Origin: Mizuhopecten yessoensis
Lineage: Eukaryota
Direction: 5' to 3'
Assembly: GCF_002113885.1 (NCBI RefSeq)
Contig: NW_018403833.1
Span: 62,001-126,000 of the forward strand
DNA: 64,000 nucleotides
Position 1 is the first letter of the stretch. Each line of letters starts with the position of its first letter. Both the position numbers and the translations under genes were made by a program. The notes below the pieces were generated by a model. That model saw nothing but the letters and a program-made list of their open reading frames with translations. It did not search any database and was not told where the DNA came from. Positions 4,714 through 34,910 of the stretch are shown here, piece by piece.

Positions 4714-5961
4714 ATAAATAAGATGTACAATGGCGATTGGTCATAGTTTTTAAATATTTATAAATTAAACAGTTGATTATAATATGTAGTGAGATATTAA
4801 TAACATATATGTTGTGAATATCTCCCAAATGTTGATCCCTATATTTAAAAAATAGCAATTGTCAATGATAAACAAGTCGTGCTGATATATGATATACAAG
4901 AACGAAATATCCCTGTGAGATTTTGTTTTGCTGACAGAGTTCCGGTTATGCTAGGCAACCATACACGATACGGTTTTTTTATTTATATATCCAACATTCG
5001 TGTGCTAGCCTCGTCACGTAGACCGCACGGAGAACATTACCACAGCCGTGCTGAAGGAAGGGCAAGGTTAACTCAGCCCTCGTTTCACTGACTACTCTGA
5101 TACTAAATCTGGATCTTGAATAGGTACATTGAATGGTGTTTACTTCATTTTGTAGACGGATACGTGAAATCGTTATTCGTTATCAATATCAGCTGGGAAA
5201 AAATCATTCATTTGCTTTTTTAAACAAATTAGTTTGCATGTTCGGTTTGCAAGCAGCATAATCTAAAACATGGACTGCCATTTTCCTTGACGTAGGAATC
5301 TAAGTTTGTTTAAAGTTGTCTGGTCTCACAATTCAGTCTCCTGTAAATGTTTCATATGCTATTTTGGTCCTCATGTTTTCATGATTTTCTTATCTTTTCT
5401 AAGTGATTTACACGCTGTAGTGACCAGTCTTATTGCTCTGTTTTCTTGGTATCTGGTCTATCTATTCCACATGGCCATCTTTCAATGTTTAGTCTCGCCA
5501 TTTTAGTCTCCTCTAAAAGGTTCGTCTCGCTATTTTGGTGTTCTTGAATTTTTCAGTCTCGCTATTTTGATGTTGTTTTAACTGTATGGTCTAGCTTTTC
5601 CGGTTTTTGTTTTCCAACCCGTTTCATAATCTACGTTATCGTTGCTTAAATATCCAAATAAAGCTGGTGTATGTATGATGGCTTTTGGTTGGGCGAAAAG
5701 TGCAATGTAAATTAACGGCACGATTTCCGACTTGTGGTATTAGGATGTAATTAATGCACACAGCCTTACAAACAGCAAAAACGTTGACAAGTTCTTCAAA
5801 TAAATGCTTGAAAATATAACATAAGGAAACACCTGTCCAAAGACATAGAATATTGATGCAGACGGCTAAACAAAGTATATCATTTTGTCGCACAAAAGGA
5901 TATAGCACTACAAATGATTATATTAATTATTCTAGTTAACTCTATAATACTCTAAAAGAAT

Positions 5962-6307
5962 CATCCTCGATATCCAGGGGTAACACTCACTTTTGCTCTC
6001 TGCACCCCTGGAATAGCAAACTTGAAGGCTCAGTGTGCGCCACCTGGTTGCTGAGACAAGAAGACTAGTTCAATCCTTTGATGTACATTAAAAGAATCTC
6101 GCGGTCAGGTAACGGTAAAAAATGACAGGCTTTGAAGTCGGGCGTCTCTCCTTTGTAATCTTCAAAGGACATGTATCAGCCTAGCGATTGGTCAGTTTTT
6201 TCACCCAAGACCAATCAAACTGCTATCTTTTTGCCTTCGATTTTGCTATGACATATTCCAGGGATGTAGAGAGCAAACGTAAGCGTAAGCCCTGGATATC
6301 GAGGATG
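5962..6307. mobile_element. MITE-like element with ~50-bp imperfect terminal inverted repeats
   Basis: CATCCTCGATATCCAGGG...CCCTGGAAT at the left end; ATTCCAGGG...CCCTGGATATCGAGGATG at the right end; non-coding interior. Confidence 0.7.
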
Positions 6308-7354
6308 GGTAAGAATATAACTATATATATACTTATATAGAGAGTTTATACGAAATAAGGTTATATGCAGTATATTTTTCATTCCATTTCCTCACGAAGG
6401 ATTTTAGTCAACAGAAAAACAATTCGTTTCCTCAAAAATAAAAATAATCAAATTTCCTCCAAACATGTGGATTATTTCACAACAATTCACAACCCCCTTA
6501 GGAAAACCGTTCCTATATCATAATACGCTGTCTGTGTTTACTCGATTCCTGTATTTTAACACGAAGTTAATTTAGGAGTTACCACTGAGCGTTGGTTATA
6601 TTTTACCTTTTTAAAATTTGTCAAGCGTCACAGTTCCTTTTTCCAATATCAATCACCAGGAAACGATAATTCTAGAATTACGTACTAGAATAATGAAAGA
6701 TAGTTTAGACATAGCTTAACAATGATAGGTAGAAACAGTGTACATTAAGACCAATCACGTTCACTTTCGATGTTTTGATAATGTTCGTTCGATTAACTGA
6801 AACAAGTTAAACTTATTATTGAAACAAGTATTGTTCGAAATTGATACAAATATATAACCAGGCACATGTTGGTTAGCGCATGTGATTTATTTTGAATATT
6901 GTTTAAATAAGTGCATAGGCGAATTTCAGACTCTATCATTTACTATTCGATACGTCACTACAGGAGATTTACGTAATTATTTGCTTCTGAATGCAAAATT
7001 AATGAAGCATTCTTGTATTAAATCGCACATTTTCGTCAAATGATGTCCATACTTTGAACCTTACACACCCGTTTCAGTAACAATTTCAGATTAGTTTGGT
7101 TCAAAAGTCAAAACGAAAACAATAGTTTAACCCTGGAAGTGGAGTTGGCCTTGATACAAATGTAGTACACATTCATTTTCTACGTTTGATTTTCCCTCAA
7201 TATCTGCCATATCATAGAGACCCGAATAGAGTCAATTTCTTATCGACCATATTTTAGTGTTTGCCATTCATAGAAACATACATATGTGCGCAAGTGCGGT
7301 CTAGGATTACACAGCAGAGTGAATGGTTACAGTTTTCAGTACTACGTTATAGTC

Positions 7355-8441
7355 ATGACTCTTGCCCTAACATTACGCTTGGTGTCTTTGAGATTAATCG
7401 TCACACATTTACGAGCTGCACATGTACAGCAGTCAAGCCGTACATATGTCGATACTCTCGCGCAGAGGGGGAACCCGGGACTACGGGCCCCCAAAAAGCT
7501 GTGGTGGGCCAAGGAGCTGACGCCCGATTTTCACGTCGCTGGCAGGTTGTCCGAACGACAGATCAAATACGCAGCGGACGGAGGATTTAAAAGTATTGTC
7601 TCGTTGTATCATTACGATGAACCATCCAAAATCGGAGAGGAATATCTCCCCACGAGTGAGGAGGCTGCCGCGATAGCGAAACAATCCGGACTACAGCATC
7701 GGGTCGTATTGGAATCCGGAAACTCTGATTGGGCTTCAGTCCAAGCTGTGGATAAGTTGTCTGCCATTATGCCGACCCTAGAAAAGCCGGTTTTACTCCA
7801 TTGTCATCGTGCGTATACCATATCATTTGTAACCATGATGCACATGGCCAATGCTTCAAAACACAACCCTAATTACAAACCTCAAGTCGACATTCAAAAG
7901 TTCTACAAGATGGCCGCCGCCATGGGGATAGATTTCACCATGGACTTTACGCAAAAAACTGCCGCAGAAATCACCGGCGAAGAAATTCCGGAGAATTTGC
8001 CGACACCAAACGTGGTTCCCAAGGTTTGGTACGACTACTGGATGGCCCACCCCGTGTACAAAAACTGGTACACGGCTGGCCAGATCCGTGAAAGTCACTT
8101 AGAAAAGTTACAAATGGACGGCTTCATCCACGTTATCAACATGAGAATGGGAGTTGATGACGAAAACGGAAATCCTTCTCAAGAGCAGGTAACTCTCATC
8201 AATGTCAAAGACGGTACACCGACGTACGGAAACAAAGAGACTGGACCGCGACAAATACCGAACACCTTGAAGAATCTTGTCGTTGACTCTGAAAAGGACA
8301 ATTCTTATGTGGCCAAGGATTCGAACGCCAACTTCGAATCGAGAAACCCAGGAGAGTTCGGAGACGAGATCGGGTATAACGAAGATCGGGAAAGACAAGT
8401 TCTGGAAAAGGCAGGTTTCCAGTATCATCACATGCCAGTCT
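7355..8441 (+). CDS. Tandem DUF442/Blh-like (PTP-fold sulfurtransferase/phosphatase-like) protein, large coding exon 1A. Encodes a putative signal peptide, domain 1 and most of domain 2; probably splices to 19676.
   Basis: ATG at 7355 (MTLALTLRLVSLRLIVTHLRA), open frame, motifs AGRLSERQIKYAADGGFKSIVSL, PVLLHCHRA, TAGQI...GFIHVINMR and EKAGFQYHHMPV. Phase-1 donor GTAAGT at 8442. Colinear with exon 1B at a constant offset of 9750. Confidence 0.8.
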
Positions 8442-10689
8442 GTAAGTATTACTACCAAATATTTGTTTTATGTATTTATGAAAGTTTGATATCATTGCAT
8501 TTTGTGTGTCACCAAACACTTCTCTTTTATTATATTATGTAACTGTTGCTGAAGCGTTTCAGTTAATGTAGTGTATATTGTTTACTCAAAAGCAGCACGA
8601 GAAACAGATTTTTGATGTTGAAACACTTGGATACCTGGTCGGCTTACTGAAGAAGAATTCACATCACGAAAATATATGTGTACTTGTTATAGATATCGAC
8701 CTCGTTTGTGCTGCAACATCTTCACTCAATCAAATGTGATGTTCAGGTCATTGGATAACATCAGATCCGTTATGCAAAGAGCATGCAGACTTGTGATATA
8801 CAATTCTAAACATATTTACTCTGTTTTGTTTGTTACATTCGTAGAGATGATTTCCTAACAAAGGTCTTTAATATTACGCATAATCATTAGGTAAACATTA
8901 CAATTGATATGATGATGGGTACTGCAGTGAAAAGGTATTCTATATTGTGACAAATAGTGTACTGGTGCCAATATTGTATTGCGTCATTTAGACAGCAAAC
9001 TAACATGGCATCATTTTGTGTAAAATCCTGAAATTTTAACTGACTCCGGTGTTAGATTTAGAATGTTTACCACAAATCGATAAGAACCAAAAATCACCCC
9101 ATCTTTAGTATCGGTGTCACAGTTATGGCATTTCGGTACTTTTTGAAAGAGTTTAACGAACTTAAAATCTTTTCAACAAAGTCTTTGTCCAAAAACAATG
9201 AAATATCCAAGGAGGTCCATAGCAACTATTTTACCTAGATAAAAAAAATATATATATATTTTTTTTTTACCTGTGATGAATTTAGATCCGATTTTATAAC
9301 ACAATCGATTTTATATCTGGCAAAGGTCTTTCTTCTACAACGAGTCTAGTAAAATTTTAAACAATTTTAAAACAAGAAAAGTTAACACACCTGTAATCTA
9401 TTTACACTATGTTACCTGCACAAACTGTTTTTGTGGTACAATCGTGCATAATCATCAAGCCGGATCTTCAAGGCAATGTTACATACCTGGGTTACCTGTA
9501 TATTTCAATGTTATCCCATACTGATATATCTTTTCTGCTTCAGTTCCTTTGTAATGTTTTATAAAATTCTTGCAAAGTTTATTTTTAAACGTTTCGTAAA
9601 AAGGCTAAGTCATGTGATCTCATTTGTAGCAAAAATAAATGTCAGTACGGATATGATGTTTCTTTTATCTTAAAGTTTCATTCATAATTGTGAAATCACC
9701 AGTTATATTCATTCCCATAAATTTTTGGCCAAGTCATGGCAGTTAAATAATGGAATGCTATAATACAAATAAGACAAATAAATGCAATATGTGTTCAACA
9801 ATTCGACAACATGTCAACAAATGTCAAGAGATAATCAATTATTTTGTTGTCGTTTTTTTCTTTTTTTTTCTTATGCTACTATTTTCCTTTTTTACAATTG
9901 TAAGCTACGTTTATTGCGAGCAGTCAAACATGTCAGTAATTAGGACAATAGTATAGCTGACTAAGTACACATCTGTATTTTATTTTAAGATTTTAATCAA
10001 CACCACATTGTTGTTGTGGTTTCTTTATTGGGAATAATTACTATTACCCCTTACTTTAAGTTATTATATCTCTACCTAAATTAGCGAGTGTGTGTGTGCT
10101 GATTTAATGATATGTTATTGTAAATAATATTAACTATTGAATGGGGTGGTGAAGATTTAAATGATTTCGTGAAAATTCTTAGCTGCTCTGAGATATATCA
10201 TAAACGTCGAAATATGTTAGCAATATTAGATGAAGACCTGTTTATTACTGAAGGTTTTTATTATGAATACAACAATGTAATTAAAACTAAAGTCGTGTAT
10301 TAGAACAAATTCAAATACGTATTTTCCAATAATTTTGACAAATGTAATAATGTACATTTCACCTTTCATACTCAGTTTTGCATGTCTGCGTGTGGTCATG
10401 GTATCTTAGCAACTGGAACGAAAGGACAGATAATACCCTTAACAATTATCATTTGTTATCGTAAAATGTATTTTTGGAGAGAGAAAAGTGTTTTAGATGA
10501 AAATGGTTTACAAGGTCGATATAATTTGAATTAAATACTTATATGAGTTTTGGATGCACATCAATTAAATTGACTCACGGTATGTTTTCAAAAATAATTT
10601 CAATGAATGGAGATGATGACTTAAAATGAATGATTCAGCAACATTACTATCACATATATTAAGAATAATGTTGCTCCGATAATTTGACA

Positions 10690-10812
10690 CAGAATAATCA
10701 ACATCATATAATCAACACCTAATAATCAACATTTAATAATCACCATTTGATTATCAACATCATATAATCAACATGTAATCATCAACATGTAATAATCAAC
10801 ATTTGATAACCA
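10690..10812. repeat. Short degenerate tandem repeat (~14-bp ATAATCAACAT unit)
   Basis: ATAATCAACA recurs about 8 times. Confidence 0.6.
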
Positions 10813-13800
10813 AAATTAAATGTAATAAAGGAGCTGGAATAAAGTAAACCAGCCTAATTTCTAACTGAATATCATTCATCGGATACTCTTTACCATCTCT
10901 ATTCAAATCGAGATGCTTTCCTATATACGCAATGGTGTATGCATCGTTATTAACTGTCTTCACACAAATAATGATACTGCATTTTCGGACATAATCTATC
11001 TGTACGAGATTTGATATAAACTACGGGTTGCTTTCCTATACGCGCAATTTTTAAATTGTTTGCACATACATTTGAAATAAAATAAATATTCACACAATAA
11101 GTGATGCCTTATCTCTGTCAACGTCAGGACAAAAACAATATTTTTATAAAAACGAGATTTGGTCACATGCATGTGCATAAAGGCAACAAACATATGGTAA
11201 TTTTTTGGCATAAAAAGGTAACTTAATGTCAAATGGCTAATTCGAAGTGCACGTGATTTTTATTTAGTGCTGATGAAAAGCTCTGCACTTAACATTTATC
11301 ATTAAGGAACTTCATCGCACTAAATCAGTTTAAGTGTACATGTATGCAGTGTTGTAAAATTTGACTGTTTGAACAGTTAAAAGCTCAAGGTCAGGTGTAA
11401 CGAATGGCATATTGTGAGCTCGCTTTTAGCGTCCTATAATGTACACCCGAAACGTGCATGTGTAAATATCCGGTGTCATGTACGAAGCAGGGTGCACGAC
11501 CCATAATCTATTATGCATGTGATATCAGGTTTGCTTTGCAGATGTAATTCCCCTGCTACCAAGAATTTTACATGTTACCTGATACCATTTTCCCCTGTGA
11601 TAGAACACAGGACCGTTCTTTATTTGACCTTGTGTTAATATTAAATTTCTGCAAACTTCGAAGAGACAGTTTGTATTCAGAGTTTGGTAATGATAATTAT
11701 TTGAGGTTCTTATGTTTCATATGTTTTTGATTGGTGGTGTTATCCATTATCGGTAGTGTGACCGGGTCGAGTGTCACTCTACCGTGTTCATGCTATGGCA
11801 TTTATGGCAAACAAGTATCTACCACCAAAACAATAATGTTTCAGGGAATGTGCAATAGTAGATTTTACAATATATAATATGCTAAATCCTATTGGGATGA
11901 GCTTTTGGATTTAAGAGAAGCATTTTTAATAACGACTGATTTTTACAATACTTCCTATCGAAGTGGTATTCAGTGCTTGTAAGTTGGGGTTTTGTTTGTT
12001 TTTTTCAAATTCAGAAAACCATACAAACTGTCACCGTCAAATGTCCTCCACATTAGTCGCCTCTCTTACGTACAGGTAATGCAGTGATATACTGCAGTTC
12101 TATTGATTCCCCGCATAAACACATGTAGTTACATATTGATAAAAAAATTGGTTGGCAAATGTTAACTAAAAATCTGAAGACGATTTAATTGCGTTGAGTA
12201 CTCACCTAAAAACGGCGCAGTTTTCTTGTCAAGCGTGAAGTTACTAAAATATTTAAGTATGGCGTCAATAATTACTTTCTTCAGTAGGAACTTTCTTAAT
12301 ACAGTAACGTTTCGAAAATATGTAATTGACACAGATAAAAAAAAAATCGTTGTATACCCGAAAATATCGGTTTTCTGTAATACTCATGAAAAATGTGTGG
12401 AACATGAATTTATTCGAATACACTAAAACATATCACCAGTACTCTGGGTAAAATAACAGCCAGGATTACGTGAGGTCATTGCTTGTTTAAATGCTAAGAC
12501 GTGTCGTGTAATCCAGGGGTGTATTTTATATAGAGGCTGTATGTAGACTCATACCAGCGTCGTTGGTAATGAAAGTGTGCAGCCAAATATAATGGGTCTG
12601 GGTAAAACGCTTATCACACTTAACATACACTAACCCTAGAGGAGATGATACTACGTGCTTTCTGATACAAAATTCACCAAATAATTACCTTACTACCAAC
12701 CAATATTGTGTTACATTTTTGTGTGGTTCATGATTGCCACAAGATTGCATGATATATTTGTTTATTGTGAATATGTGTGTGTAAGTTTCACAATAAATGC
12801 GGTTTTATTTTATTGTTTCACAATACATTGCAAATTTACAAATATTTGTATTAACATAGACAAAAAATACTTACCAGCACCCGTCGGTGTTCTTTATATA
12901 TACATTCTGTTACTTTACCAGGGTTCTCTATCGGAGTTGTCTCGAACTACGCTTAAGAATAACTACGGTAATGATAGTTATTTTACCAACTATATACATA
13001 ATTATCTGTGATAATTTAAGATACGTTCTTCGTGTTTAACACGTGTCCACGGTGTCTTGCATCACTGGTGAATGACATATATATAACAGCAGGTTTAAAG
13101 ACGAGTTCAATCGCGATATAAGAAATGCTTCACCGAAGGTTTTCTTCTTCTGGAATGTCATGGTTTTGTGTTTTGTACTAATACATTCTCAGCTCTTCGG
13201 CTGTCTAAGCACTTGCATTTCGACTTAAATAGTCTTTCGTTCAATAATATATAAATGCACCGGGTATATACTTCAATGAAAAAACCCATTGTATTCTGCC
13301 CGTAAATTGCTGTTTGGGAGGAGTCATGCTTTGCTTATAATCGATAAGTACACATCAACAGATGCAAAAACAATCTTGATAGTCTTGATTTTTTGCGGTA
13401 CTTGTATAATATTTCATACTTGGTTAATTTTTTTAATAATCACATGATGATTTTGATATGGTTTGAAGTACATAGTTATCAAAAAATATTTCAAAATGAT
13501 CATTATTTGGCTCCTATATACCGAGGTAAAATATTGATCGACGAGAGGATATGTTTACATTCCTCTGTTAGGTCAAAGAAACCACGAGTTAGATTAAACA
13601 GTTACTGTTGCCTCTCGTACAGCTCTCGAGTCCATACTCCCAAGGCTGAATTCACAATTTGTATAATAAGCAAACTGTAAGATAAAGTTTGAATTACTAT
13701 GATGATTGAAATATAGCTACGCTGCATATTTATTCTGAATTCATAGAAAACACCATTTTAATAGAGACGCATTATTATTTATGCATTTTTTTTCTCTTAT

Positions 13801-14794
13801 TCAATGTTTGCACTCTTAACTATTATGGCTATTCTTGTTTAGCACTATATAGGCACACATGTATTGACACTGTATTATGTCTTAAACCCGCTTATCTCTA
13901 ACCCGCGTGTAGGTACAGTAGGTGCAAGGGACATACATATGGCCCATCTAAACGCTGGTCTGGTCTGGTTCCTCGGTCTGGTCCGGTGGAATTTTATGAC
14001 TTTGATTATCCTGTCTGCTGTGGTTTGACTGTCATGAGTCTTGGCCTAATCCAGGTCACAAGTTCATGTTGAAGCAAAGTTAGCGAATAAACTAAGCAAC
14101 ATTTTGTTTATAGAAAAAATATAAAGGGAAACGGTTAAGTTGAAAAAATATTTATACAATGACTTTCAATTGACATAATGACATTTATTGGACATCGAAA
14201 CTCTTTTTTGTCTAATCTTGTTTTATCAGTCTAGTTTCAAACTATACATTTGCTAAGCAAGTGGGTCGATTTTTCATCAAAAGCAACCCCGAGCTAACAA
14301 CAATTTTAACAAAACTGCATATCACCATGCCTGGGCTCAAATGGTTACCTTGCAAAACTCTCTAAATGTATTTTTTTCATTATTATATACAATGTAATTT
14401 GGATATCAAAATCACAGTTCAACGATAAGAATTTATTTATAGTACATAATATTTTACACAAATTATATTTTAATATATTGTATTTTAAAATCAAATAATT
14501 CTTATCTCGCAAGCATTGTAAACATTTAACACAAATGTAAAATTTATCTATAAGTGAATAAAACAAACAATATCTCTAGATGAAGGTAAGATTCATTCCA
14601 AATAATCTTTGTTAATGGTCAAAGATTCACGTCAACGCTCTTCGTTCACCTGATACATAAGCTTATGAAATATAAGGCATAAATTCATGGTATTCGACAA
14701 GTAGATTTTCAGTATGCATACACGAGCTTGACCCATACTTAATGCCTCATTGGTTGAAAGTGTAAACGTCTTCAAACTACCACATTAAAAGAAT

Positions 14795-15160
14795 GGTTTG
14801 GTTTAGTATTATTTAACGTCACATCAACAGCTATGGTCATTTAATCACAACCTTCCCTGTATGCAAGATGCATGCGTGTAGTGTACGCGTGTGTTTTCGG
14901 AGGCTGCTTCGTGTTTGTCTCCTTGTGATAGCGCGGAACTGATGCAGATTTTATAGTGATACCTCACTGAAACACACTGCCGAAGACACCCAGCGGGACA
15001 CCCCACCCGGTCACATTATACTGACAACAGGCGAACTAGTCGTCCTACTCCTACATTGCTGAGCGTTAGACAGGAGTAGAAACTACCTTTTTTACAGACT
15101 TTGGTATGTCTCCACCAGGGGACAGAACCCAAAGCCTTCCTCACAGGAGCGAACGCTCAA
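14795..15160 (-). mobile_element. tRNA-derived Meta-core SINE
   Basis: Minus strand: tRNA-like head (TTGAGCGTTCG...GGGTTCTGTCCCC), core CGCTCAGCA...GTCAGTATAATGTGACCGGGTGGGG...CAGTGAGGTATCACTATAAA, and tail GACGTTAAATAATACTAAACCAAACC. Confidence 0.7.
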
Positions 15161-16184
15161 CTAAAGGCCAAAAGTGAGGCATTGTCAAGGGAGACATTAG
15201 GAAAAAGAAAGTTGTTTAGAAAGTAGAGAAAAGATAAGATCCCAAATGTAGTCGCCTCTTACGATCATGCAATGGGGGCAGCAGGTACAATTCTTACGCC
15301 CTGCCTCCCACATTCTGCAGGGGGTTTCCATTTAAGATGCGTTTTACAACAAGCAGCAGGTTATTGCAGGTTTTCTCAAGCACCGACCTGCAGGGGTGTT
15401 AGGATATCGTACTTAAACATTACACACACACCTAATATACATCGCCTCGCTCTGCTCGACCATAATCGTAATATGAGCCTCCCATATTTATTATGGTGTT
15501 TTTTTGGTTTTTTAGCGAATCAATTGCTTGCTTATTTTTATATGCGTGATTACAAAAACATTGTTCACACGATAAAATAACAAAAGGTTACAAAGGACTG
15601 AATATAAACCATTCGTAATAACAAAAATGATAATAAATAGTAAGAACAAGGGATTTTAAGAATAAGCAGATTTAAACCATTAGTTTCAGCACTATTTCAT
15701 GGTTTTATGATATAGCCATCGTTTTCTCAAATTAGTGCAAGCATCACATTTCCTTATCTGTTGTTCAGAAATTCATCACAATTGATTAAGTCCACACAGC
15801 TCAGAGTAAAGTGCAAATCGGAGTCTGAAGCAGGACAGGCGTCAGCCACTGTAGCATTGCCACTCATAGTAACATCACTCCAGTGCTTGCTTGTGAGCAA
15901 CTTAAGTGGGTCAAGTGAAGGATATAGACCAAAACGTGTGTAGTGTTAAAAATAGAGATGTGTAAAATGTCACCGAGTAAAATAGAGACGGGGGTTTGGA
16001 GGTTGGGGCCCTCACACGACAGAAACAATATATAGACAAGGCTTAAAGTGTTGTGCTCCTGGTTTATTAACTTTCTGTAAAGCAAAAATGCGATAATTTG
16101 AAAATAAACAAGAGACCGGATGGAAATTGCAAAAACTGAAAATCAACTGAAATCAATCATCAGACACGTATTGGACTTATAACA

Positions 16185-16690
16185 ACAGACCAAGGATAAC
16201 AGACCAAGGACACTACTCTAGAACAATAATACCAGAGTTTAGACCAATCACACAATCTTAAGAGTCTGGACGAATACTAAAAGAGTCTAGAACTATAACA
16301 CCATAGTTAGGACCACTAACACCAGAGTCTAGACCAATAGCACAAGAGGTAAGACCAATAACACCAGAGCTTTGACCAATAACATCAGAATTGAGACCAA
16401 TAACACCTGAGTCTAAACCAATAACACCTGAGTCTAAACAAATAACACCAAATTTAAGACCTATAACAACAGTCTAAACCAATAACAAAGGTTAGACGAA
16501 TAACACCAGAGTTTAGCCCAATAATAAAAGCGTCTAGACAAATAACACCAAAGTTTAAACCTACAACACCAGAGTTTAGACCAATAACACCAGATTTTTT
16601 ACCAATCACATCCGTCTTTACCAATAACACCAGAATTTATACCAATAACACCAGAGTCTTTACCAATAACACAGGACCAAGATAACAGAC
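16185..16690. repeat. Degenerate minisatellite, ~21-bp unit AGACCAATAACACCAGAGTCT
   Basis: CCAATAACACC recurs with ~21-bp spacing. Confidence 0.85.
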
Positions 16691-17101
16691 CAAAAGAGTA
16701 GACAAATAATATAAGACCAAAGACACGAGAGATAAGAGATGGTGATTTGTCAGTCTATGAGTTAGTACGTGCCACCACAATCCCGCCGCACACGTACGCC
16801 GTGTGCTTTCGTGACATGGTAACACGCACAGCTGTGTGCAGTGGACACGGCAAAGGACAAGCTAATGTAGCAACGACGTAACCTAGTAAATGGCGTTGAT
16901 TCCATTTAAGGCGAAATATTACACGTCTGTATCAGGATGATATAATAGTCCATCGATTTTATGGGGTTTTTGTGTGTGTGTGAATGTTCAGTATTAGAGA
17001 ATACACGATCGCAGGAAACCAGCTATAATTAGCCACGTCATCATTCGGGACCTCTCGGATTTATAGGAATCAAGTAAGGTACATAGTGATTGTTCGGAGG
17101 C

Positions 17102-18191
17102 ATGAATCTTGTTCTATCATTACATTTGCTGATATTGCGATTGGTTATAACGTCTTTGCGAGCAGAATATTTACAACACACGAACCGTACTACCTATGTC
17201 GATACGTTCCTACAGAGGCGGGCCCCGGGACTCCGGGCCCCAAAGAAACTTTGGTGGGCCAAGGAGCTGACGCCCGACTTTCACGTCGCTGGCAGGTTGT
17301 CCGAACGACAGATCAAATACGCAGCTGACGGAGGATTTAAAAGCATTGTGTCCTTGTTTCATGATGATGAACCATCCCAAATCGGCGATGAGTATCTGCC
17401 CACTAGTGCCGAAGCTGCAGAGATCGCACAACTAGCCGGTCTAGATTATCGAGTTGTACTGGAGTCTGATAATTGCGATTGGGCATCAGTAGTAGCCGTC
17501 GAGAAAATATCTGCCATTATTCCAACATTAAAAAAGCCTATTCTCCTCCATTGTAATCGAGCTTACACGATAGCATTCACGACCATGATGTACTTAGCCA
17601 ACGCTTCAAAACACGACCAAAATTTCACACCTCAAGTCAACACAGAAAACATATTCAAGATGGCCGCCGTCATGGGCTTAGATTTTACTATGGACTTCAC
17701 GCTAGAGACTGTAGCGAAAATCAACAGCGAAACGATTCCGGAGAATTTACCTCAACCAAATGTGGTGCCAGAGGAATGGTATGACTACTGGATGGCCCAC
17801 CCCGTGTATCAGAACTGGTTCACTGCGGGACAGATCCGCCAAAGTCACCTGGAAAATATACAAATGGCCGGCTTCATCCACGTTATCAACATGAGAATGG
17901 GAGTTGATGACGAAAACGGAAATCCTTCCCAAGAGCAGGTAACTCTCATCAACGTTAAAGATGGCACACCGACGTACGGAAACAAAGAGACTGGACCGCG
18001 ACAAAAACCGGACACTTTGAAGAATATTGTCATTGACTCCACAAAGAACAATTCTTTTGTGACCAAGAATTCTGACGTCAATTTCGAATCGCGTAATTCA
18101 GGAGAGTTTGGAGACGAGATTGGCTATAACGAAGACCGGGAGAGACAAGTTCTAGAAAAGGCGGGTTTCCGATACTATCATATGCCAGTCC
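17102..18191 (+). CDS. Tandem DUF442/Blh-like protein, coding exon 1B (gene model 17102-18191, 19676-19789, 21519-21694; 459 aa, ends in KDEL)
   Basis: ATG at 17102 (hydrophobic leader MNLVLSLHLLILRLVITSLRA), PILLHCNRA, TAGQI...GFIHVINMR. Phase-1 donor GTAAGT at 18192. Confidence 0.88.
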
Positions 18192-19675
18192 GTAAGTGCT
18201 ATATCATACTGGTATTCTGTTCCTTTTGTATTTTATCACAGACATACACACTATACATCTCTGCTCTTACAGTATGTGGAAAAAATACACAAATTCGTTT
18301 ATTGCAATAAAGAAATTAGGACAATTTAATAGATTGTTTTTACAATATTTCAAACTTGACATAAAGTTATAAAAAGTTTTGGAAAAATATTATTTACATT
18401 TCCATCCCTTTTGTCATACCAGTTAAGAAATAAGGTCCAGTGCTGACTCAAAATGTTGCTCTTTGTTGAAGATTTTTTGCCATGTTGAAGTTAATTACGC
18501 CATATTTGGTCGTAAGTAACAATCCTGCTTGGGGATTTTTTTCTGTAATTAATGTGTTAAAGTATGATTTACAAACATGTTTTGACTATGATTGTACACC
18601 AAAACTTGTTGGATTTTTTTTATATAAGTCTAACCAATAGCACGAGTTTAGTTGATAGATGGAATATGTCGCATTTTCTTTTCACTGTCCTACATATCCG
18701 ACACACGATGACACATTTCACCGGCACTTGTGATTTTGAGACTGTTTTACGTGTGAGACCACTTAGATGGTTCGTTAGATTTACTTTTTGAGATTATTCA
18801 AATGTTCGTGATTAGTTGAGCTTAACTGTCTTTTAGATGTTTACTTTTGTACACCTTGTATCCCCTTGTCATTGATTACGCTTGAGTTTAAAAATATATA
18901 TATGCCATTAATGAACCTGTGGTCGTGACAAGCTTGCACGCTTTATTTAATTAAAAACAAAATTGAACATTTGTCGATTTGATTTTTAAAAATCTTAAGT
19001 AAAACATTTTCATGAAGCCGCGTAATAACCTTTAAAAGGCCTTAAAGGTACCGTAATTCTCCTATAGAAACCAAAATATAAAGCTAAGGATAAGATACTG
19101 CACTGTTTTAAGTGGTAAATGCCTTCCTTGCTAGGTGACAAAAGGAGTAGGAGGAACATTTATAAACAGTTGGTCATGTTTATTTCGTCTTTGTACAATT
19201 GAAACGCATGTGAGCTGCATGGTAATATTTCAGAAGATAAATATTTCTGGAAATTCAGGACTGTCCTACTGATCACGACCTTTGTATTACTAAACTCTCA
19301 TGTAATGCCTTACATTGCTGACACGCACGAAGAGAAGTAACTTTCACCCAAAATGATATTTCAGATATTTCAGTCTTAATAATTCTGAAATATTTATAGT
19401 AAATTCTTTTTCGTCATATATCCTCGGGTGTTGTACTTGCGTTTCATTGGCTACAGACTCTACTTGCACTCGTGTCTGTAATCCGAAAATAAAATCTACC
19501 CAAGAAAACAATGACGTTATCCATGGCCCCATCTCATTTTCTTAGCCTAGTGATCCGGACTTGATTCGTTACAAATATTGGAATGTGCCATGTCCCCGGC
19601 TGGGCATCAAAATGTACAGGCTTATCCCATCATCATTCATTTGATCTAATTATACCACGTTTTGTGTATTTGCAG

Positions 19676-19789
19676 TGTCTGGTGGAAAGTTTAGCCCAGA
19701 GTTATTCGGGAAATACAAGGACAAGCTATTGGAGATCGGGAGAACGGGAGAGCCTGTCCTCGTCCATTGTGCTAGCGCCCACAGAGTCG
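19676..19789 (+). CDS. Tandem DUF442/Blh-like protein, exon 2 (domain-2 Cys loop PVLVHCASAHRV)
   Basis: TTTGCAG acceptor and GTAAGT donor; 114 bp, phase 1/1. Translates LSGGKFSPELFGKYKDKLLEIGRTGEPVLVHCASAHRV. Same length as, and homologous to, 33172-33059. Confidence 0.88.
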
Positions 19790-20214
19790 GTAAGTAGACT
19801 ACTACATACCTGTCCACAGCGGTCAGTTGTCTATAGAGGTGGGCTATACGGTTTTAGATACGTTTCCGATAATACGTAATCTATCGATGGTTGACGTCAT
19901 TTTGTTTGGGAATACGAAATTTACCAAACAAGAAACCTTTTAATGACATACCTGGTTTTGTGTTCGTGCTAGGTAGTTAATGCAATATATTTACGATTGC
20001 CACTTCCCACCCTTTTCGTCAATCCAGAGAATATTTGATGATTTATATGTATCACGCTTAAGCACTGTCGTATTCTCTCTTAATTTGGTTTATTTAGGTT
20101 TGATTTGTATTTTTCGAAGAAGAAACTATATCTGAATTTGAACTTCTTTTCACCCCCTCCATGTTATTCGATTAGTATTGTGATCTGGACCCAATGAACA
20201 AGTTATTTATAGAA

Positions 20215-20735
20215 GTCGCCTTTCTGTAGAAGTCACCTGTCTGTAGTGGTACTCATTCTGTTAAGTTCTCCTGTTACATGGAGTAGAGGTGACCTGATTG
20301 TAAAGGTCACCTGTCTGTAAAGGTCACATGACAGTAGAGGTCACCTGTTTGTAAAGTTCACCTGTTTGTAGCTTTCACCTGTCTGTAAAGGTCACCTGTC
20401 TGTAGGGGTCACCTGTCTGTAAAGGTCACCTGTCTGTAGGGGTCACCTGTGTGTATAGGTCACCTGTCTGTAAAGGTACAACCTGTCTGTAGAGTTCACC
20501 TGTCAGCAGGGGTCCGCTGCATGTAGTGGACCCCTGTTGGAAGAGGACACCGTTCATTTTGTAGAGGTTGCTATCTTTAAAGGTCACCTGTTTGTACAGG
20601 TGACCTGTCAGCAGGGGATTCACCTGTCTGTAGAGGACACCATTCATTTTGTAGAGGTTGCTATCTGTAAAGATCGCCTGTTGGTAGAGGTTATCTGTTA
20701 CTAGAGGTCGTAATATATAGAGGTCACTTGTTTGT
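20215..20735. repeat. Intronic minisatellite, 17-bp unit GTCACCTGTCTGTAGAG
   Basis: GTCACC occurs at 20391, 20408 and 20425, and so on. Confidence 0.85.
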
Positions 20736-21518
20736 ACATTTTACATCAGTGAAAGATGAAAGTTAAATGAATGAAAAGGAAGACCATATATACAGGTGTT
20801 TGAAGGACAAGGAATACTACATCCAGAGCATACGTCACTCTGGTCTTAAGACATTTAACCTATTTGCATCTACAGCCTTAATCGTAACGACAGGTTAACA
20901 ATTTTATAGATGTCACCCTAAGGTAACATGTCTGTGGAAGTCAGCTTAAGGACAGATAAACCAATGTGTGAATGTTACCTCAAGATAGATATGTATACGT
21001 CACAGCCTGCCAGGATAGGTAATCCAAATAACCAATAAACCAGGATATAGAGGTCCTTTCCGGATAACTTGTTTTGCAGGTTCACTCTAAGCACGTTAAA
21101 ACCTGTATAAAGCGGTCAATTTATATACTGGCCTCTTTGTTAATGCGATAAACGTACCACAACCTATTTGTACGTTATAATTTGTCTTGTTGTATTACTG
21201 GACAGATTGTCGTCTTTCCTTTGGTTTCAGCGTCGTTTCAGTTCCTTTTGTCGTCTTTCTTTTGATTTTGGTGACTTGTCAGTTCCTGTTGTTGTCTTTC
21301 CTTTTGTTTTGGTGTCTCCTAGATTCCTGTTGTTGTATTTCCTTTTGTTTTCGGTTTCTCTTCAATTTCTGTATTATTATTAGTATGCCGACATTGTGTT
21401 CCGATTTTATAATTGTGGGTTGATGTTTTGGTATTTTATTTCTCTATTTTACATAAAATATCATTTCTGTGATACATAACTCCACTTCAACACTGTTTCG
21501 CCTGTTTATTTTCCACAG

Positions 21519-21694
21519 CTTACATGACTGTGCTGGCCGCCGCACTACAGTACAACAAAGACCTAGACTGGGCTCTACAGAGGACGCGCGAGCTCGGATT
21601 CGTCGTGAGCCCCACCGAGCACAAGGACGTTTACCTTATGTACGCTGCCTGGTTAGACTCCAACAAGTTCAACTCTACTAAAGACGAACTTTGA
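21519..21694 (+). CDS. Tandem DUF442/Blh-like protein, terminal exon 3 ending in the ER-retention signal KDEL
   Basis: TTCCACAG acceptor. Translates AYMTVLAAALQYNKDLDWALQRTRELGFVVSPTEHKDVYLMYAAWLDSNKFNSTKDEL-TGA. AATAAA at 21901. Confidence 0.88.
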
Positions 21695-32553: not shown

Positions 32554-32726
32554 TCATCTGCGGCCAATCTCGTTGCCACTGGAATCGGTCAGCCAGGCGA
32601 CATACATACGATACACGTCCGGCGATGTCATTGGCCCGACTGGGAACCCTATCTCGTCAAGTTTGGACAGAGCCCAATTCAAGTCCTGACCGTCCTGGAG
32701 CGCAGCAGCGAGGACCGTGAGGTAGG
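32554..32726 (-). CDS. Tandem DUF442/Blh-like paralog C, terminal exon 3 (no KDEL)
   Basis: CGTCAG acceptor. AYLTVLAAALQDGQDLNWALSKLDEIGFPVGPMTSPDVYRMYVAWLTDSSGNEIGRR-TGA is homologous to 21519-21694. Confidence 0.87.
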
Positions 32727-33058
32727 CTGACGATCAAAGACAAAGCAACACTAAGTTACAATGAGAGTAAAGCCAATGTAAAGACGCGGAGTGACTATGG
32801 TGTTAGTACTGTTATACTTATTTTAGAGCAGTCAAAGTTTAGCGAACGAACGAGTTTTGACAGATAAGCGCTTTGATAAATTGGCGAAACAACAACATAT
32901 TCAATAGAGAAAAGTATACAGAAAGTTCCACTTCTAAAGTGGAAAAAACGCTTACATAAGACTTCCTCTTAAATATTACTTTTACAGTAATTTACAGTAA
33001 ATGTATGCTATTTTAACCACCTGGACATCTTCTCTGGATTTTTTTTATTATATATCAC

Positions 33059-33172
33059 CTGCACGCCTTGAGTCGGAGCAGTGTACGAGGACTGGTTCTC
33101 CTGTTTCTCCGATCTCCAGAAATTTGTCTTTAAACTCGGAAAACAACTCCCTGCTGTACTGGCGACCATTGT
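33059..33172 (-). CDS. Tandem DUF442/Blh-like paralog C, exon 2 (PVLVHCSDSRRA)
   Basis: 114 bp, phase 1/1, TTTTATAG acceptor and GTGAT donor. Translates DNGRQYSRELFSEFKDKFLEIGETGEPVLVHCSDSRRA. Confidence 0.88.
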
Positions 33173-33844
33173 CTATAAAAGACAGATTAAAGATGATTAA
33201 TGTTTTTAGCAACGATTTAATGTCAATACATTGTTACAATACGGATGGTTGAGTCACAGTTTAAAACATCGGTCATGATTGGATCAACAGAAATGACCAA
33301 AATCATTCGTGGTGATGCGTCTTGCAAATTTGATGGCAGCCTTCTTTTCCTACTCTTGAGGAACCATGAGGACACAATAAGTTTTTTCCATTGCAATACT
33401 TGGGACATTTGTCTTATTCCCTCACTCTCCTTGACGTGGTGTTGTTCTTAATCTCCGCGTCATATGACGTTTTCGTTATTTGTGGAAATGACGTAGATCC
33501 CAAATACGAGATACATCAAGAAATGCTATGCATGTCATATTATATTTATATTCGTCCATAATTATTGGACGACTATTTTCAACGCACACAAAAAGGGAAA
33601 AAGCCGTAACATAATTCAAAATCGACTCAAAAACACACAGGAACTGGGCAGACCTCAAAACAAAAAGGAAGGCAGCAACAGTAACTGTGGAGACACAAAA
33701 ACAAAAGTAAATACAACAACAGGAACGAAGGAGACACCAAAACAAAACGAAAGGCGTCATGATCATAACCTCCTTAGCAATTCTAAAACTTACTAGACAC
33801 CAAGGTTTCCTAGTTGAAATGTGAACAGCAAGGACACAACTTAC

Positions 33845-34910
33845 CTAGAGGGAGATGATGGTATGTCAAACCAGCCTTCTCCACAGCAACTTGCTCCAGT
33901 CCCTCATTGTATCCGACACCGTCTCCAAACTCAAGGGAGTTCCGCTGCTCGTAGTTCACGGAAGACGTAGCCGAAATATAAGTGGTCGCTTTGTCAAGGT
34001 CAATTCGAGTTCTTACTAGCGTATCCGGTGATTGACGTGGCCCGATAGTGGCATTTCCGTACGTGGGCGTTCCGTCTACGATGTTCAGCAGTGTCACAGT
34101 TTCCTGTGAGGGTTGGTTGTGTGTCGAGGTACCTAAACGTAGGTTGATCACGTGTTTGAAACCGGTGCCGACAATAGCAGGTATGTGTGTGGAAAGAATT
34201 TGTCCTCCAACAAACCAACTTTTGTAAACGAAATGAACCAACCAATAGTTTGACCATTCAACCGGATATGCAGTGGTGTTCGGAAACACTTTCGGTAGAG
34301 GACTTCCGGTGATTTTTGACACGACTTCCGAAGTGTTATTTGCTGTAAAGTCTAGTCCCAAAGATGCAGTAACTTCGTAGAAGACATCACTCGTAATACG
34401 AGGCCGGAAGTTAGGATCAACTCTTGTCTGGTTCGCCATATACATTAATGTTGCAAATGTTATTGTATGCGCACGATGACAATGCATTAGAATAGGTTTC
34501 TCCATTTCGGCAATGGCAGATGTCAGTTTCTGTACAGTACTTACTTTATACCAATCATCCTCGGAATCAAGTATAGCTCTAAAACCCATATTTACAGCAT
34601 ATGCCATCGTCTTTGCCCCATCTGTCGTCGTGAACGTTTCCAGCCCCAAATTTCCTGGGGAATTGAACCGGAAGAGCGTAATGATGCTTCTGAAACCTCC
34701 CTCGGACGCATATTTTATTTGCCTTTCCGTAAGTCGTCCGGTCAAGTACAGGTCAGGAGACATCTTCCGGATCCACCAAAGTTTCTGGAGAGAATTCGGA
34801 TTTACACGGTCCGGAAAAACATCACGGAACAGAAACCGTTTCTGATGAGCTGCGTTACAGGCGTAAATAACAGTACAAATAAGAACTATTCGAAACTGTA
34901 CGGTGGCCAT
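33845..34910 (-). CDS. Tandem DUF442/Blh-like paralog C, exon 1 (model 34910-33845, 33172-33059, 32726-32554; 450 aa, predicted secreted)
   Basis: Signal-peptide-like MATVQFRIVLICTVIYACNA; TGRLTERQIKYASEGGF, PILMHCHRA and GFKHVINLR; several N-X-S/T sequons; phase-1 GTAAGT donor at the same position as in exons 1A and 1B. Confidence 0.88.

What the first reader, a model, noticed from the sequence alone, without database searches (positions are those of the whole stretch)
7355..21694. Variable first exons spliced to shared constant exons (UGT1A/protocadherin-like architecture)
Seen: exon 1A (7355-8441) is a fully open paralog of exon 1B with its own ATG and leader and a perfect phase-1 GTAAGT donor at the identical codon position. 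I found no exon 2 or exon 3 homolog between 8442 and 17100. The last exonic base is T in 1A and C in 1B; joined to exon 2 (TG...) these give TTG and CTG, both Leu. The many synonymous differences and absence of frameshifts argue that 1A is under selection. Inference: alternative promoters produce two isoforms (458 and 459 aa) with different domain-1/insert halves but the same domain-2 Cys loop and KDEL tail.
Basis: partly seen in the sequence, partly recalled or inferred. Interest (0 to 1): 0.75.

Follow-up and report, generated by a model that had tools for sequence, protein, structure and literature searches.

The report
Two first exons, shared scallop exons
A Yesso scallop gene for an uncharacterised phosphatase-like protein has two duplicated first exons that each join the same two last exons; this is real and conserved in four scallops, but both isoforms are already in RefSeq and it is an ordinary alternative-first-exon gene.

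Summary
Exon 1A (7355-8441) and exon 1B (17102-18191) are open paralogs, 76-77% identical in protein. Each has its own ATG and a phase-1 GTAAGT donor at the same codon. Exon 2 (19676-19789, not 19790) and exon 3 (21519-21694) are single-copy in the 988-Mb genome.

RNA-type contigs from two studies cover 7302/7310-8441 without a mismatch. They then continue with the first 30 bases of exon 2 (29/30 identical).

The two spliced products are identical to RefSeq proteins of Mizuhopecten yessoensis LOC110456117. The 1A form is isoform X2 (XP_021362359.1, also OWF55705.1). The 1B form is isoform X1 (XP_021362352.1).

Pecten maximus, Ylistrum balloti and Argopecten irradians have the same layout, annotated as isoforms X1 and X2. 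The 1A and 1B exons form sister clades with matching species order. dN/dS among orthologs is 0.04-0.12, so both exons are functional and the duplication is old.

Only two cassettes exist, so the UGT1A/protocadherin comparison holds in principle but not in scale.

The protein has two tandem PTP-fold (DUF442) domains and ends in KDEL. The shared exon 2 encodes the invariant Cys-X4-Arg loop.

The 1B-to-exon-2 junction and both transcription starts were not tested with reads. I rate it already known and of low interest.

The parts
7225..7354 (+). Region upstream of exon 1A. It holds a weakly conserved TGTGCGC-type block near 7284-7293. The 5' UTR is as seen in RNA contigs, which begin at 7302 and 7310.
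   Evidence: records 8 and 16 begin at 7302 and 7310; alignment of four scallops, 53% mean identity with a few invariant columns.
7355..8441 (+). Variable first exon 1A: ATG, leader, all of PTP-like domain 1, and the N-terminal part of domain 2 with its insert. It is followed by a phase-1 GTAAGT donor.
   Evidence: RNA contigs; identical to residues 1-362 of P0070.
8442..19675 (+). Intron of the 1A isoform (11.2 kb). It contains exon 1B and has no exon 2 or exon 3 homolog.
   Evidence: tblastn; no long ORFs; no RNA depth from 8442 to 10999.
17024..17049 (+). Conserved block upstream of exon 1B: a TATA-like element followed by GCCACGTCA and CATTCGG. It is nearly invariant in four scallops and is a candidate 1B core promoter.
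   Evidence: run of invariant columns 53-77 of the window row; blastn between orthologous upstream regions.
17102..18191 (+). Variable first exon 1B, the paralog of 1A, with its own ATG and a classical hydrophobic leader. It is followed by a phase-1 GTAAGT donor.
   Evidence: identical to residues 1-363 of P0004.
19676..19789 (+). Shared exon 2 (114 nt). It encodes the invariant His-Cys-X4-Arg loop of domain 2 and is single-copy in the genome.
   Evidence: The loose end of the RNA contigs behind 8441 matches its first 30 nt at 29/30.
21519..21694 (+). Shared exon 3 coding part: the C-terminal helices of domain 2, then STKDEL and the stop. It is single-copy in the genome.
32572..34895 (-). Context: a separate three-exon paralog (about 43% identical) with its own exons 2 and 3. 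Its first intron lies at the equivalent place, and its C-terminus has no KDEL.

Best explanation
This is Mizuhopecten yessoensis LOC110456117. It is one gene with two tandemly duplicated, mutually exclusive first exons, 1A and 1B. Each first exon carries its own start codon, secretion-type leader and 5' splice donor. Whichever first exon is transcribed is spliced to the same exons 2 and 3. Transcripts that start at 1A remove 1B as part of an 11.2-kb intron. The products are two proteins of 458 and 459 aa. They share the catalytic Cys-X4-Arg loop, the last helices and the KDEL tail. They differ in the leader, the whole first PTP-like domain and most of the second domain. The exon duplicated in the scallop lineage, after it split from pearl oysters and mussels and before the four sampled scallops diverged. 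Both copies have been kept by purifying selection, with occasional gene conversion between them. Shown here: the exon anatomy, the 1A-to-exon-2 junction, conservation and selection. Inferred: independent promoters, mutually exclusive use, and functional specialisation through domain 1.
For: Anatomy of both exons. No private exon 2 or 3 for 1A; exons 2 and 3 are unique in the genome. Only 1A, 1B and one distant paralog exist in the genome. RNA: contigs of 1709 nt (X1) and 1618 nt (X2), from two studies, lie on 7302/7310-8441 with no mismatch. They continue with the start of exon 2 at 29/30, the one difference being a synonymous T>C at 19692. There is no depth from 8442 to 10999. The 1A model equals P0070 (XP_021362359.1 and OWF55705.1, isoform X2). 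The 1B model equals P0004 (XP_021362352.1, isoform X1). P. maximus, Y. balloti and A. irradians have the same order (1A, 5-7 kb, 1B, one exon 2, one exon 3). All eight donors read CCAGTC N|GTAAGT. dN/dS is 0.04-0.08 among 1A orthologs and 0.06-0.12 among 1B orthologs. The 1A and 1B clades have 100% SH-aLRT support and the same species topology outside the conversion tracts. The scallop A+B clade has 100% support within molluscs. The upstream blocks of 1A and 1B are conserved and unrelated to each other.
Against: The 1B junction and the ratio of the two isoforms are therefore untested. The two raw RNA runs gave no read on 1A, so expression depends on tissue or condition, or is low. X1 and X2 are only guessed to be RNA; their spliced form and the empty intron argue that they are. 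Only the first 30 bases of the contig overhang are printed, so the rest of the contig was not checked. Contig starts are not transcription start sites.
Confidence: 0.9

Rival explanations
1. Exon 1A is an orphan relic of a partial gene duplication. It is open by chance or only recently dead, and it is not part of any functional mRNA.
For: There are no private exons 2 and 3. Raw RNA runs X22 and X23 show no reads on it.
Against: Spliced contigs in two studies join it to exon 2. dN/dS is 0.04-0.08 against orthologs, with saturated dS above 1. Orthologous 1A exons are open, with conserved donors, in four species.
Confidence: 0.02
2. 1A belongs to a separate gene with its own, non-homologous or unassembled downstream exons. 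The link to exons 2 and 3 would then be an annotation or assembly artefact.
For: The 1A-to-exon-2 intron is long (11.2 kb) and contains another coding exon. A short extra contig (C81643) duplicates the 3' end of 1A.
Against: The RNA overhang behind 8441 is the start of exon 2, and exon 2 is unique in the genome. C81643 is only an alternative haplotype of 8134-10175, 99-100% identical with one 230-nt indel. Three other assemblies show the same order.
Confidence: 0.02
3. The 1A/1B pair is an assembly artefact, that is, collapsed or duplicated haplotypes rather than two real exons.
For: This is a draft assembly of 82,659 contigs from a heterozygous bivalve.
Against: The two exons differ by 19% in DNA, and only the exon itself is alignable. 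The A and B clades each contain all four species.
Confidence: 0.01
4. The design is real, but one isoform is a minor by-product. For example, 1B may be the working first exon, with 1A used rarely, or the reverse. There would then be no division of labour.
For: Isoform ratios were not measured. The 1A contigs in X1 and X2 run through exon 2 without breaking, which hints that 1B was scarce in those runs.
Against: Both exons are under purifying selection in all four scallops. Each has its own conserved upstream block. Eleven residues are fixed differently between the A and B clades, nine of them in domain 1.
Confidence: 0.1

Closest known systems
RefSeq gene LOC110456117 (Mizuhopecten yessoensis), isoforms X1 and X2, and its orthologs: LOC117330705 (Pecten maximus), LOC132545013 (Ylistrum balloti) and the Argopecten irradians X1/X2 pair
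   Same: It is the same locus. The orthologs have the same two-first-exon layout.
   Different: Nothing differs structurally. The records call the proteins 'uncharacterized', and my two paper searches found no description of the locus.
UGT1A locus and clustered protocadherin loci (variable first exons spliced to constant exons)
   Same: There are tandem paralogous first exons. Each has its own start codon and donor and no demonstrated acceptor. Each encodes most of the protein and is spliced to shared 3' exons that carry a common functional module.
   Different: There are only two cassettes in the whole genome, against 9-13 in UGT1A and 14-22 per protocadherin cluster (figures from my own knowledge). 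There is no evidence of stochastic or combinatorial promoter choice. Here the constant exons carry the catalytic loop, not a cofactor-binding or cytoplasmic domain.
Tandem PTP-fold phosphatases: the tandem PTP-like phytase of Mitsuokella multacida (3f41, 4wu3), Cdc14, and single-domain DUF442 proteins (3gxh, 2f46)
   Same: The predicted structure (pLDDT 87, pTM 0.86) has two PTP-fold domains. The best Foldseek matches are these proteins. Pfam PF04273 scores above its gathering threshold on the full proteins. The C-terminal domain has the invariant Cys and Arg.
   Different: Sequence identity is only 8-19%. The loop is Cys-X4-Arg. Domain 1 has Thr where the Arg should be. The protein has a leader and a KDEL tail, so it is probably in the ER lumen. 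No activity is known.

Membership tests
Variable-first-exon / constant-exon loci (UGT1A, clustered protocadherin type) | Tandem paralogous first exons, each with its own start codon and 5' splice donor | tested here: met
   two open exons, each starting with ATG, with a GTAAGT donor at the same codon, 77% identical.
Variable-first-exon / constant-exon loci (UGT1A, clustered protocadherin type) | Every variable exon is spliced to the same constant exons | tested here: inconclusive
   The 1A-to-exon-2 junction is shown in two RNA-type runs, and exons 2 and 3 are unique in the genome. The 1B-to-exon-2 junction rests on the RefSeq model P0004 and on adjacency only.
Variable-first-exon / constant-exon loci (UGT1A, clustered protocadherin type) | A separate promoter in front of each variable exon | tested here: inconclusive
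   The 1A contigs begin 45-53 nt upstream of the ATG with no upstream exon. A strongly conserved TATA-like block lies upstream of 1B, and a weaker, unrelated block lies upstream of 1A. There are no CAGE or 5' RACE data.
Variable-first-exon / constant-exon loci (UGT1A, clustered protocadherin type) | A large array of cassettes that gives combinatorial or substrate diversity | tested here: not met
   The whole-genome six-frame scan finds only 1A, 1B, one distant complete paralog, a haplotig and a 91-nt scrap.
PF04273 BLH_phosphatase (DUF442), PTP superfamily | Profile match above Pfam's gathering score | tested here: met
   33.7 bits (P0070) and 37.3 bits (P0004) against a cut-off of 26.1, best on domain 1. 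The exon-1 pieces alone fall just below it.
PF04273 BLH_phosphatase (DUF442), PTP superfamily | PTP fold | tested here: met
   a confident model. Foldseek probability is 1.0 to DUF442 structures (TM by target 0.61-0.72), tandem PTP-like phytase and Cdc14.
PF04273 BLH_phosphatase (DUF442), PTP superfamily | Catalytic Cys and Arg in the phosphate-binding loop | tested here: met
   In domain 2, C394 and R399 are invariant in 29 homologs, with spacing X4. In domain 1 the Cys is kept in scallops but Thr stands at the Arg position, so domain 1 is probably not a phosphatase.
PF04273 BLH_phosphatase (DUF442), PTP superfamily | Phosphatase (or other) activity | not testable with these tools
   This needs expression and an assay.
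ER-lumenal resident proteins | A cleavable signal peptide plus a C-terminal KDEL-type signal | tested here: inconclusive
   KDEL is the last four residues. The 1B leaders have uncharged runs of 12-17 residues. The 1A leaders have three conserved Arg and an uncharged run of only 7. No signal-peptide predictor was available.

The most novel reading that the evidence does not exclude
The two first exons may be more than redundant copies and may divide labour for an ER-lumenal tandem PTP-like enzyme of unknown substrate. On this reading, 1B is driven by a conserved TATA plus CCACGTCA block. The reverse complement of that block reads TGACGTGG, which from memory resembles the unfolded-protein-response element. 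1B also encodes a classical signal peptide. 1A has an unrelated promoter block and a conserved, Arg-interrupted, weakly hydrophobic leader, which could change targeting efficiency or compartment. The eleven residues fixed differently between A and B cluster around the Cys loop and the preceding Asp loop of the non-catalytic domain 1. That would change partner or substrate choice while the catalytic loop stays constant.
Probability: 0.15. Interest if true: 0.45.

Novelty: already known. Interest (0 to 1): 0.22.

Why it matters
This locus is a clean, minimal example of how duplicating a single exon, rather than a whole gene, yields two proteins around one catalytic loop. The design has been kept across four scallop genera. 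It adds no new principle, because alternative first exons from tandem exon duplication are common in animals and both isoforms are already in public annotation.

The remaining value is practical. The protein family (tandem DUF442 domains with a KDEL tail, widespread in molluscs) has no characterised member. The A and B isoforms offer a natural domain-swap experiment for whoever studies it.

Tried and rejected
- **Raw RNA runs X22 and X23.** No read fell on 1A at about 19% sampling. This is uninformative about junctions.
- **One 6,000-base lay.** It could not span both 8441 and 19676, so the junction was read from the printed 30-base overhang and not as a joint.
- **phmmer of domain 2 (P0070:225-458) against PDB sequences.** It gave only chance hits to leucocidin and rifin. 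The profile search and the fold search were informative instead.
- **Pfam on exons 2 and 3 alone.** No hit; they are too short.
- **Paper searches.** 'DUF442' with 'KDEL', and alternative first exons / tandem duplication / scallop, gave nothing on this locus.
- **A script holding typed leader peptides.** I redid it from stored files.
- **The first tree with the distant paralog and Pinctada**. It left the B group unresolved because of long branches. The DNA tree without the conversion tracts and the 29-taxon tree resolved it.
- **Joined models.** I joined the exons only inside local scripts, to check the frame, for the local tblastn against the window, and to compare with database proteins. No joined model of my own went to a database search. 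Those searches used single exons by reference or the database proteins P0070 and P0004.
Full report
**What is in the sequence**

Window 7355-8441 is an open exon of 362 codons plus one base. It starts with ATG and is followed by GTAAGT. Window 17102-18191 is its paralog, 363 codons plus one base, with the same donor at the same codon. The two are 76-77% identical in protein.

DNA similarity is 80.7% over 1100 nt. It starts 4 nt before the ATG and stops at the 6-nt donor, so neither promoters nor introns still align.

- Exon 2 is 19676-19789.
- Exon 3 is 21519-21694 and ends STKDEL-stop.
- Joining either first exon to exons 2 and 3 gives open products of 458 and 459 aa, with TTG or CTG (both Leu) at the split codon.

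I made these joins only inside local scripts. They served to check the frame, to run the local tblastn against the window, and to compare with database proteins. Those searches used single exons by reference or database protein ids.

**No private exons for 1A, and no further cassettes**

- tblastn of the exon 2 and exon 3 peptides against the window finds only 19678-19788 and 21521-21691. It also finds the exons of a separate three-exon paralog on the minus strand (34895-33831, 33170-33057, 32727-32572; about 43% identical).
- DNA searches of the whole 988-Mb assembly find exon 2 once and exon 3 once.
- A six-frame scan with exon 1A finds only 1A, 1B, that paralog, a 4-kb contig (C81643) and a 91-nt scrap on C3755.
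- C81643 is an alternative haplotype of window 8134-10175, 99-100% identical with one 230-nt indel.
- No ORF of note lies between 8442 and 17100.

**Identity of the locus**

A word search with exon 1A by reference returned scallop proteins.

- P0004 is 'LOC110456117 isoform X1 [Mizuhopecten yessoensis]', 459 aa. It equals the 1B product exactly.
- P0070 is 'LOC110456117 isoform X2' (XP_021362359.1, also GenBank OWF55705.1), 458 aa. It was found in the cluster of the Pecten maximus ortholog and equals the 1A product exactly.

**RNA evidence**

Exon 1A's words are held at 96-100% by 14 runs guessed to be RNA, whose contig sets total 34-102 Mb, from eight studies (P1-P8). Four further runs of unknown kind (study P9) hold all of them.

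I laid four runs on window:5000-10999.

- X1 (study P1) gave a 1709-nt contig on 7302-8441. X2 (study P2) gave a 1618-nt contig on 7310-8441. Neither has a mismatch.
- Both contigs then leave the genome exactly after 8441. Their overhang matches the first 30 bases of exon 2 at 29 of 30. The one difference is a synonymous T>C at 19692.
- There is no depth from 8442 to 10999, so these are spliced RNA and not DNA.
- Because exon 2 is unique in the genome, the 8441->19676 junction is shown.
- The two raw RNA runs (X22, X23) had no reads on 1A.

**Conservation and selection**

I fetched the orthologous loci of P. maximus (L006), Y. balloti (L007) and A. irradians (L008). Each has 1A, then 4.9-7.0 kb, then 1B, then one exon 2 and one exon 3. 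Each is annotated as isoforms X1 and X2 that end at the same coordinate. All eight donors read CCAGTC N|GTAAGT.

| Comparison (Nei-Gojobori) | dN/dS |
|---|---|
| Among 1A orthologs | 0.04-0.08 |
| Among 1B orthologs | 0.06-0.12 |
| Between A and B | 0.06-0.19 |

dS is saturated, at about 1 or more, in almost all pairs.

In a 29-protein tree the eight scallop exons form one clade (100% support), split into A (98) and B (90). That clade sits apart from Pinctada, Mytilus and other molluscs. The exon therefore duplicated in the scallop lineage, before these four genera diverged.

**Gene conversion**

Within M. yessoensis the A-B dS (0.68) is far below the A-A orthologous dS (1.6).

- Third-position identity between Myes 1A and 1B reaches 0.90-0.95 in codons 61-80, 261-280 and 301-320. 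It is 0.2-0.75 for the A/B pairs of the other species there, and 0.40-0.70 for Myes-Pmax 1A.
- Identical runs of 47 and 60 nt occur.
- A DNA tree of these tracts puts Myes_A next to Myes_B on very short branches, with weak support (68).
- The rest of the exon gives clean A and B clades (100/100) with identical species order.
- P. maximus has one such 60-nt run.

I read this as patchy gene conversion. No formal test was run.

**What the protein is**

Pfam PF04273 (BLH_phosphatase, DUF442) scores 33.7 and 37.3 bits against a cut-off of 26.1 on the two full proteins.

An AlphaFold model of P0070, built on 29 homologs, has pLDDT 87 and pTM 0.86. It shows two PTP-type domains. The best Foldseek matches are the tandem PTP-like phytase of Mitsuokella, DUF442 structures (3gxh, 2f46) and Cdc14. 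A profile search of PDB sequences agrees weakly.

- C394 and R399, in the His-Cys-X4-Arg loop encoded by shared exon 2, are invariant in all 29 homologs.
- Domain 1 keeps the Cys but has Thr at the Arg position. It is probably non-catalytic, like the first domain of Cdc14 (an inference).

The first exon thus supplies the leader, domain 1 and the scaffold of domain 2. The shared exons supply the catalytic loop, the last helices and KDEL.

**How the isoforms differ**

Of 367 aligned columns, 184 are invariant in all eight exons. Eleven are fixed differently between the A and B clades, and nine of those lie in domain 1. They include His/Asn151 next to Cys150, and Gly/Asp122 and Ser/Cys124 next to the conserved Asp-Trp.

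The 1A leaders carry three conserved Arg, no acidic residue and an uncharged run of only 7. The 1B leaders have uncharged runs of 12-17, and most outgroup leaders 15-20 (one has 7).

Upstream of 1B, a TATA-like element followed by GCCACGTCA and CATTCGG (17024-17049) is nearly invariant in four scallops, even though synonymous sites are saturated. Upstream of 1A there is only a weaker, unrelated block. These points suggest separate regulation and some specialisation, but they are inferences.

**Comparison and verdict**

The locus works like UGT1A or the clustered protocadherins in principle: variable first exons and constant exons. It has two cassettes, not an array, so it is better described as an ordinary alternative-first-exon gene born of tandem exon duplication. 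My two paper searches found no description of it, but the isoforms are in RefSeq for four species. I saw that its C-terminus indeed lacks KDEL but did not pursue it.

Novelty is low.

Noticed in passing
L008:20065-23564 (Argopecten irradians ortholog, end of exon 2 into intron 2): A 63-nt unit is repeated about 55 times at 90% matches. The unit is the last ~50 nt of exon 2, which code the Cys-X4-Arg loop, plus the GTAAGT donor and a few intron bases. Because 63 nt is 21 codons, every copy carries a potential in-frame donor. The array is absent from the M. yessoensis window.
   Followed up: partly
window 7355-8441 versus 17102-18191 (codons about 55-80 and 261-320): There are patches of near-identity at synonymous sites between 1A and 1B that are specific to M. 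yessoensis. P. maximus has one 60-nt patch of its own. This looks like gene conversion between the two cassettes.
   Followed up: partly
window 17024-17049: A TATA-like element followed by GCCACGTCA is nearly invariant upstream of exon 1B in four scallops. Its reverse complement, TGACGTGG, resembles (from memory) the unfolded-protein-response element. That would suit a KDEL protein.
   Followed up: partly
window 5960-6310: This is a short repeat with very high depth in all four runs. It shows many variant letters, loose ends and opposite-strand joints. It is probably a highly expressed dispersed repeat (SINE-like) or an inverted-repeat element.
   Followed up: no
window 32572-34895 (minus strand): This is a complete three-exon paralog, about 43% identical, with its own exons 2 and 3. 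Its C-terminus has no KDEL. Synteny with a Spec3-domain gene in between is kept in Y. balloti. P. maximus and A. irradians show the Spec3 gene too, but their loci end before any paralog.
   Followed up: partly
L004 (G000:C81643) and L005:1511-1601 (G000:C3755): C81643 is an unplaced alternative haplotype of window 8134-10175 with a 230-nt indel. C3755 holds a 91-nt scrap that is 92% identical to exon 1A 8145-8235.
   Followed up: partly
window 20210-20504 and 21207-21359: Intron 2 holds a 17-nt minisatellite (about 17 copies) and a 41-nt T-rich repeat.
   Followed up: no
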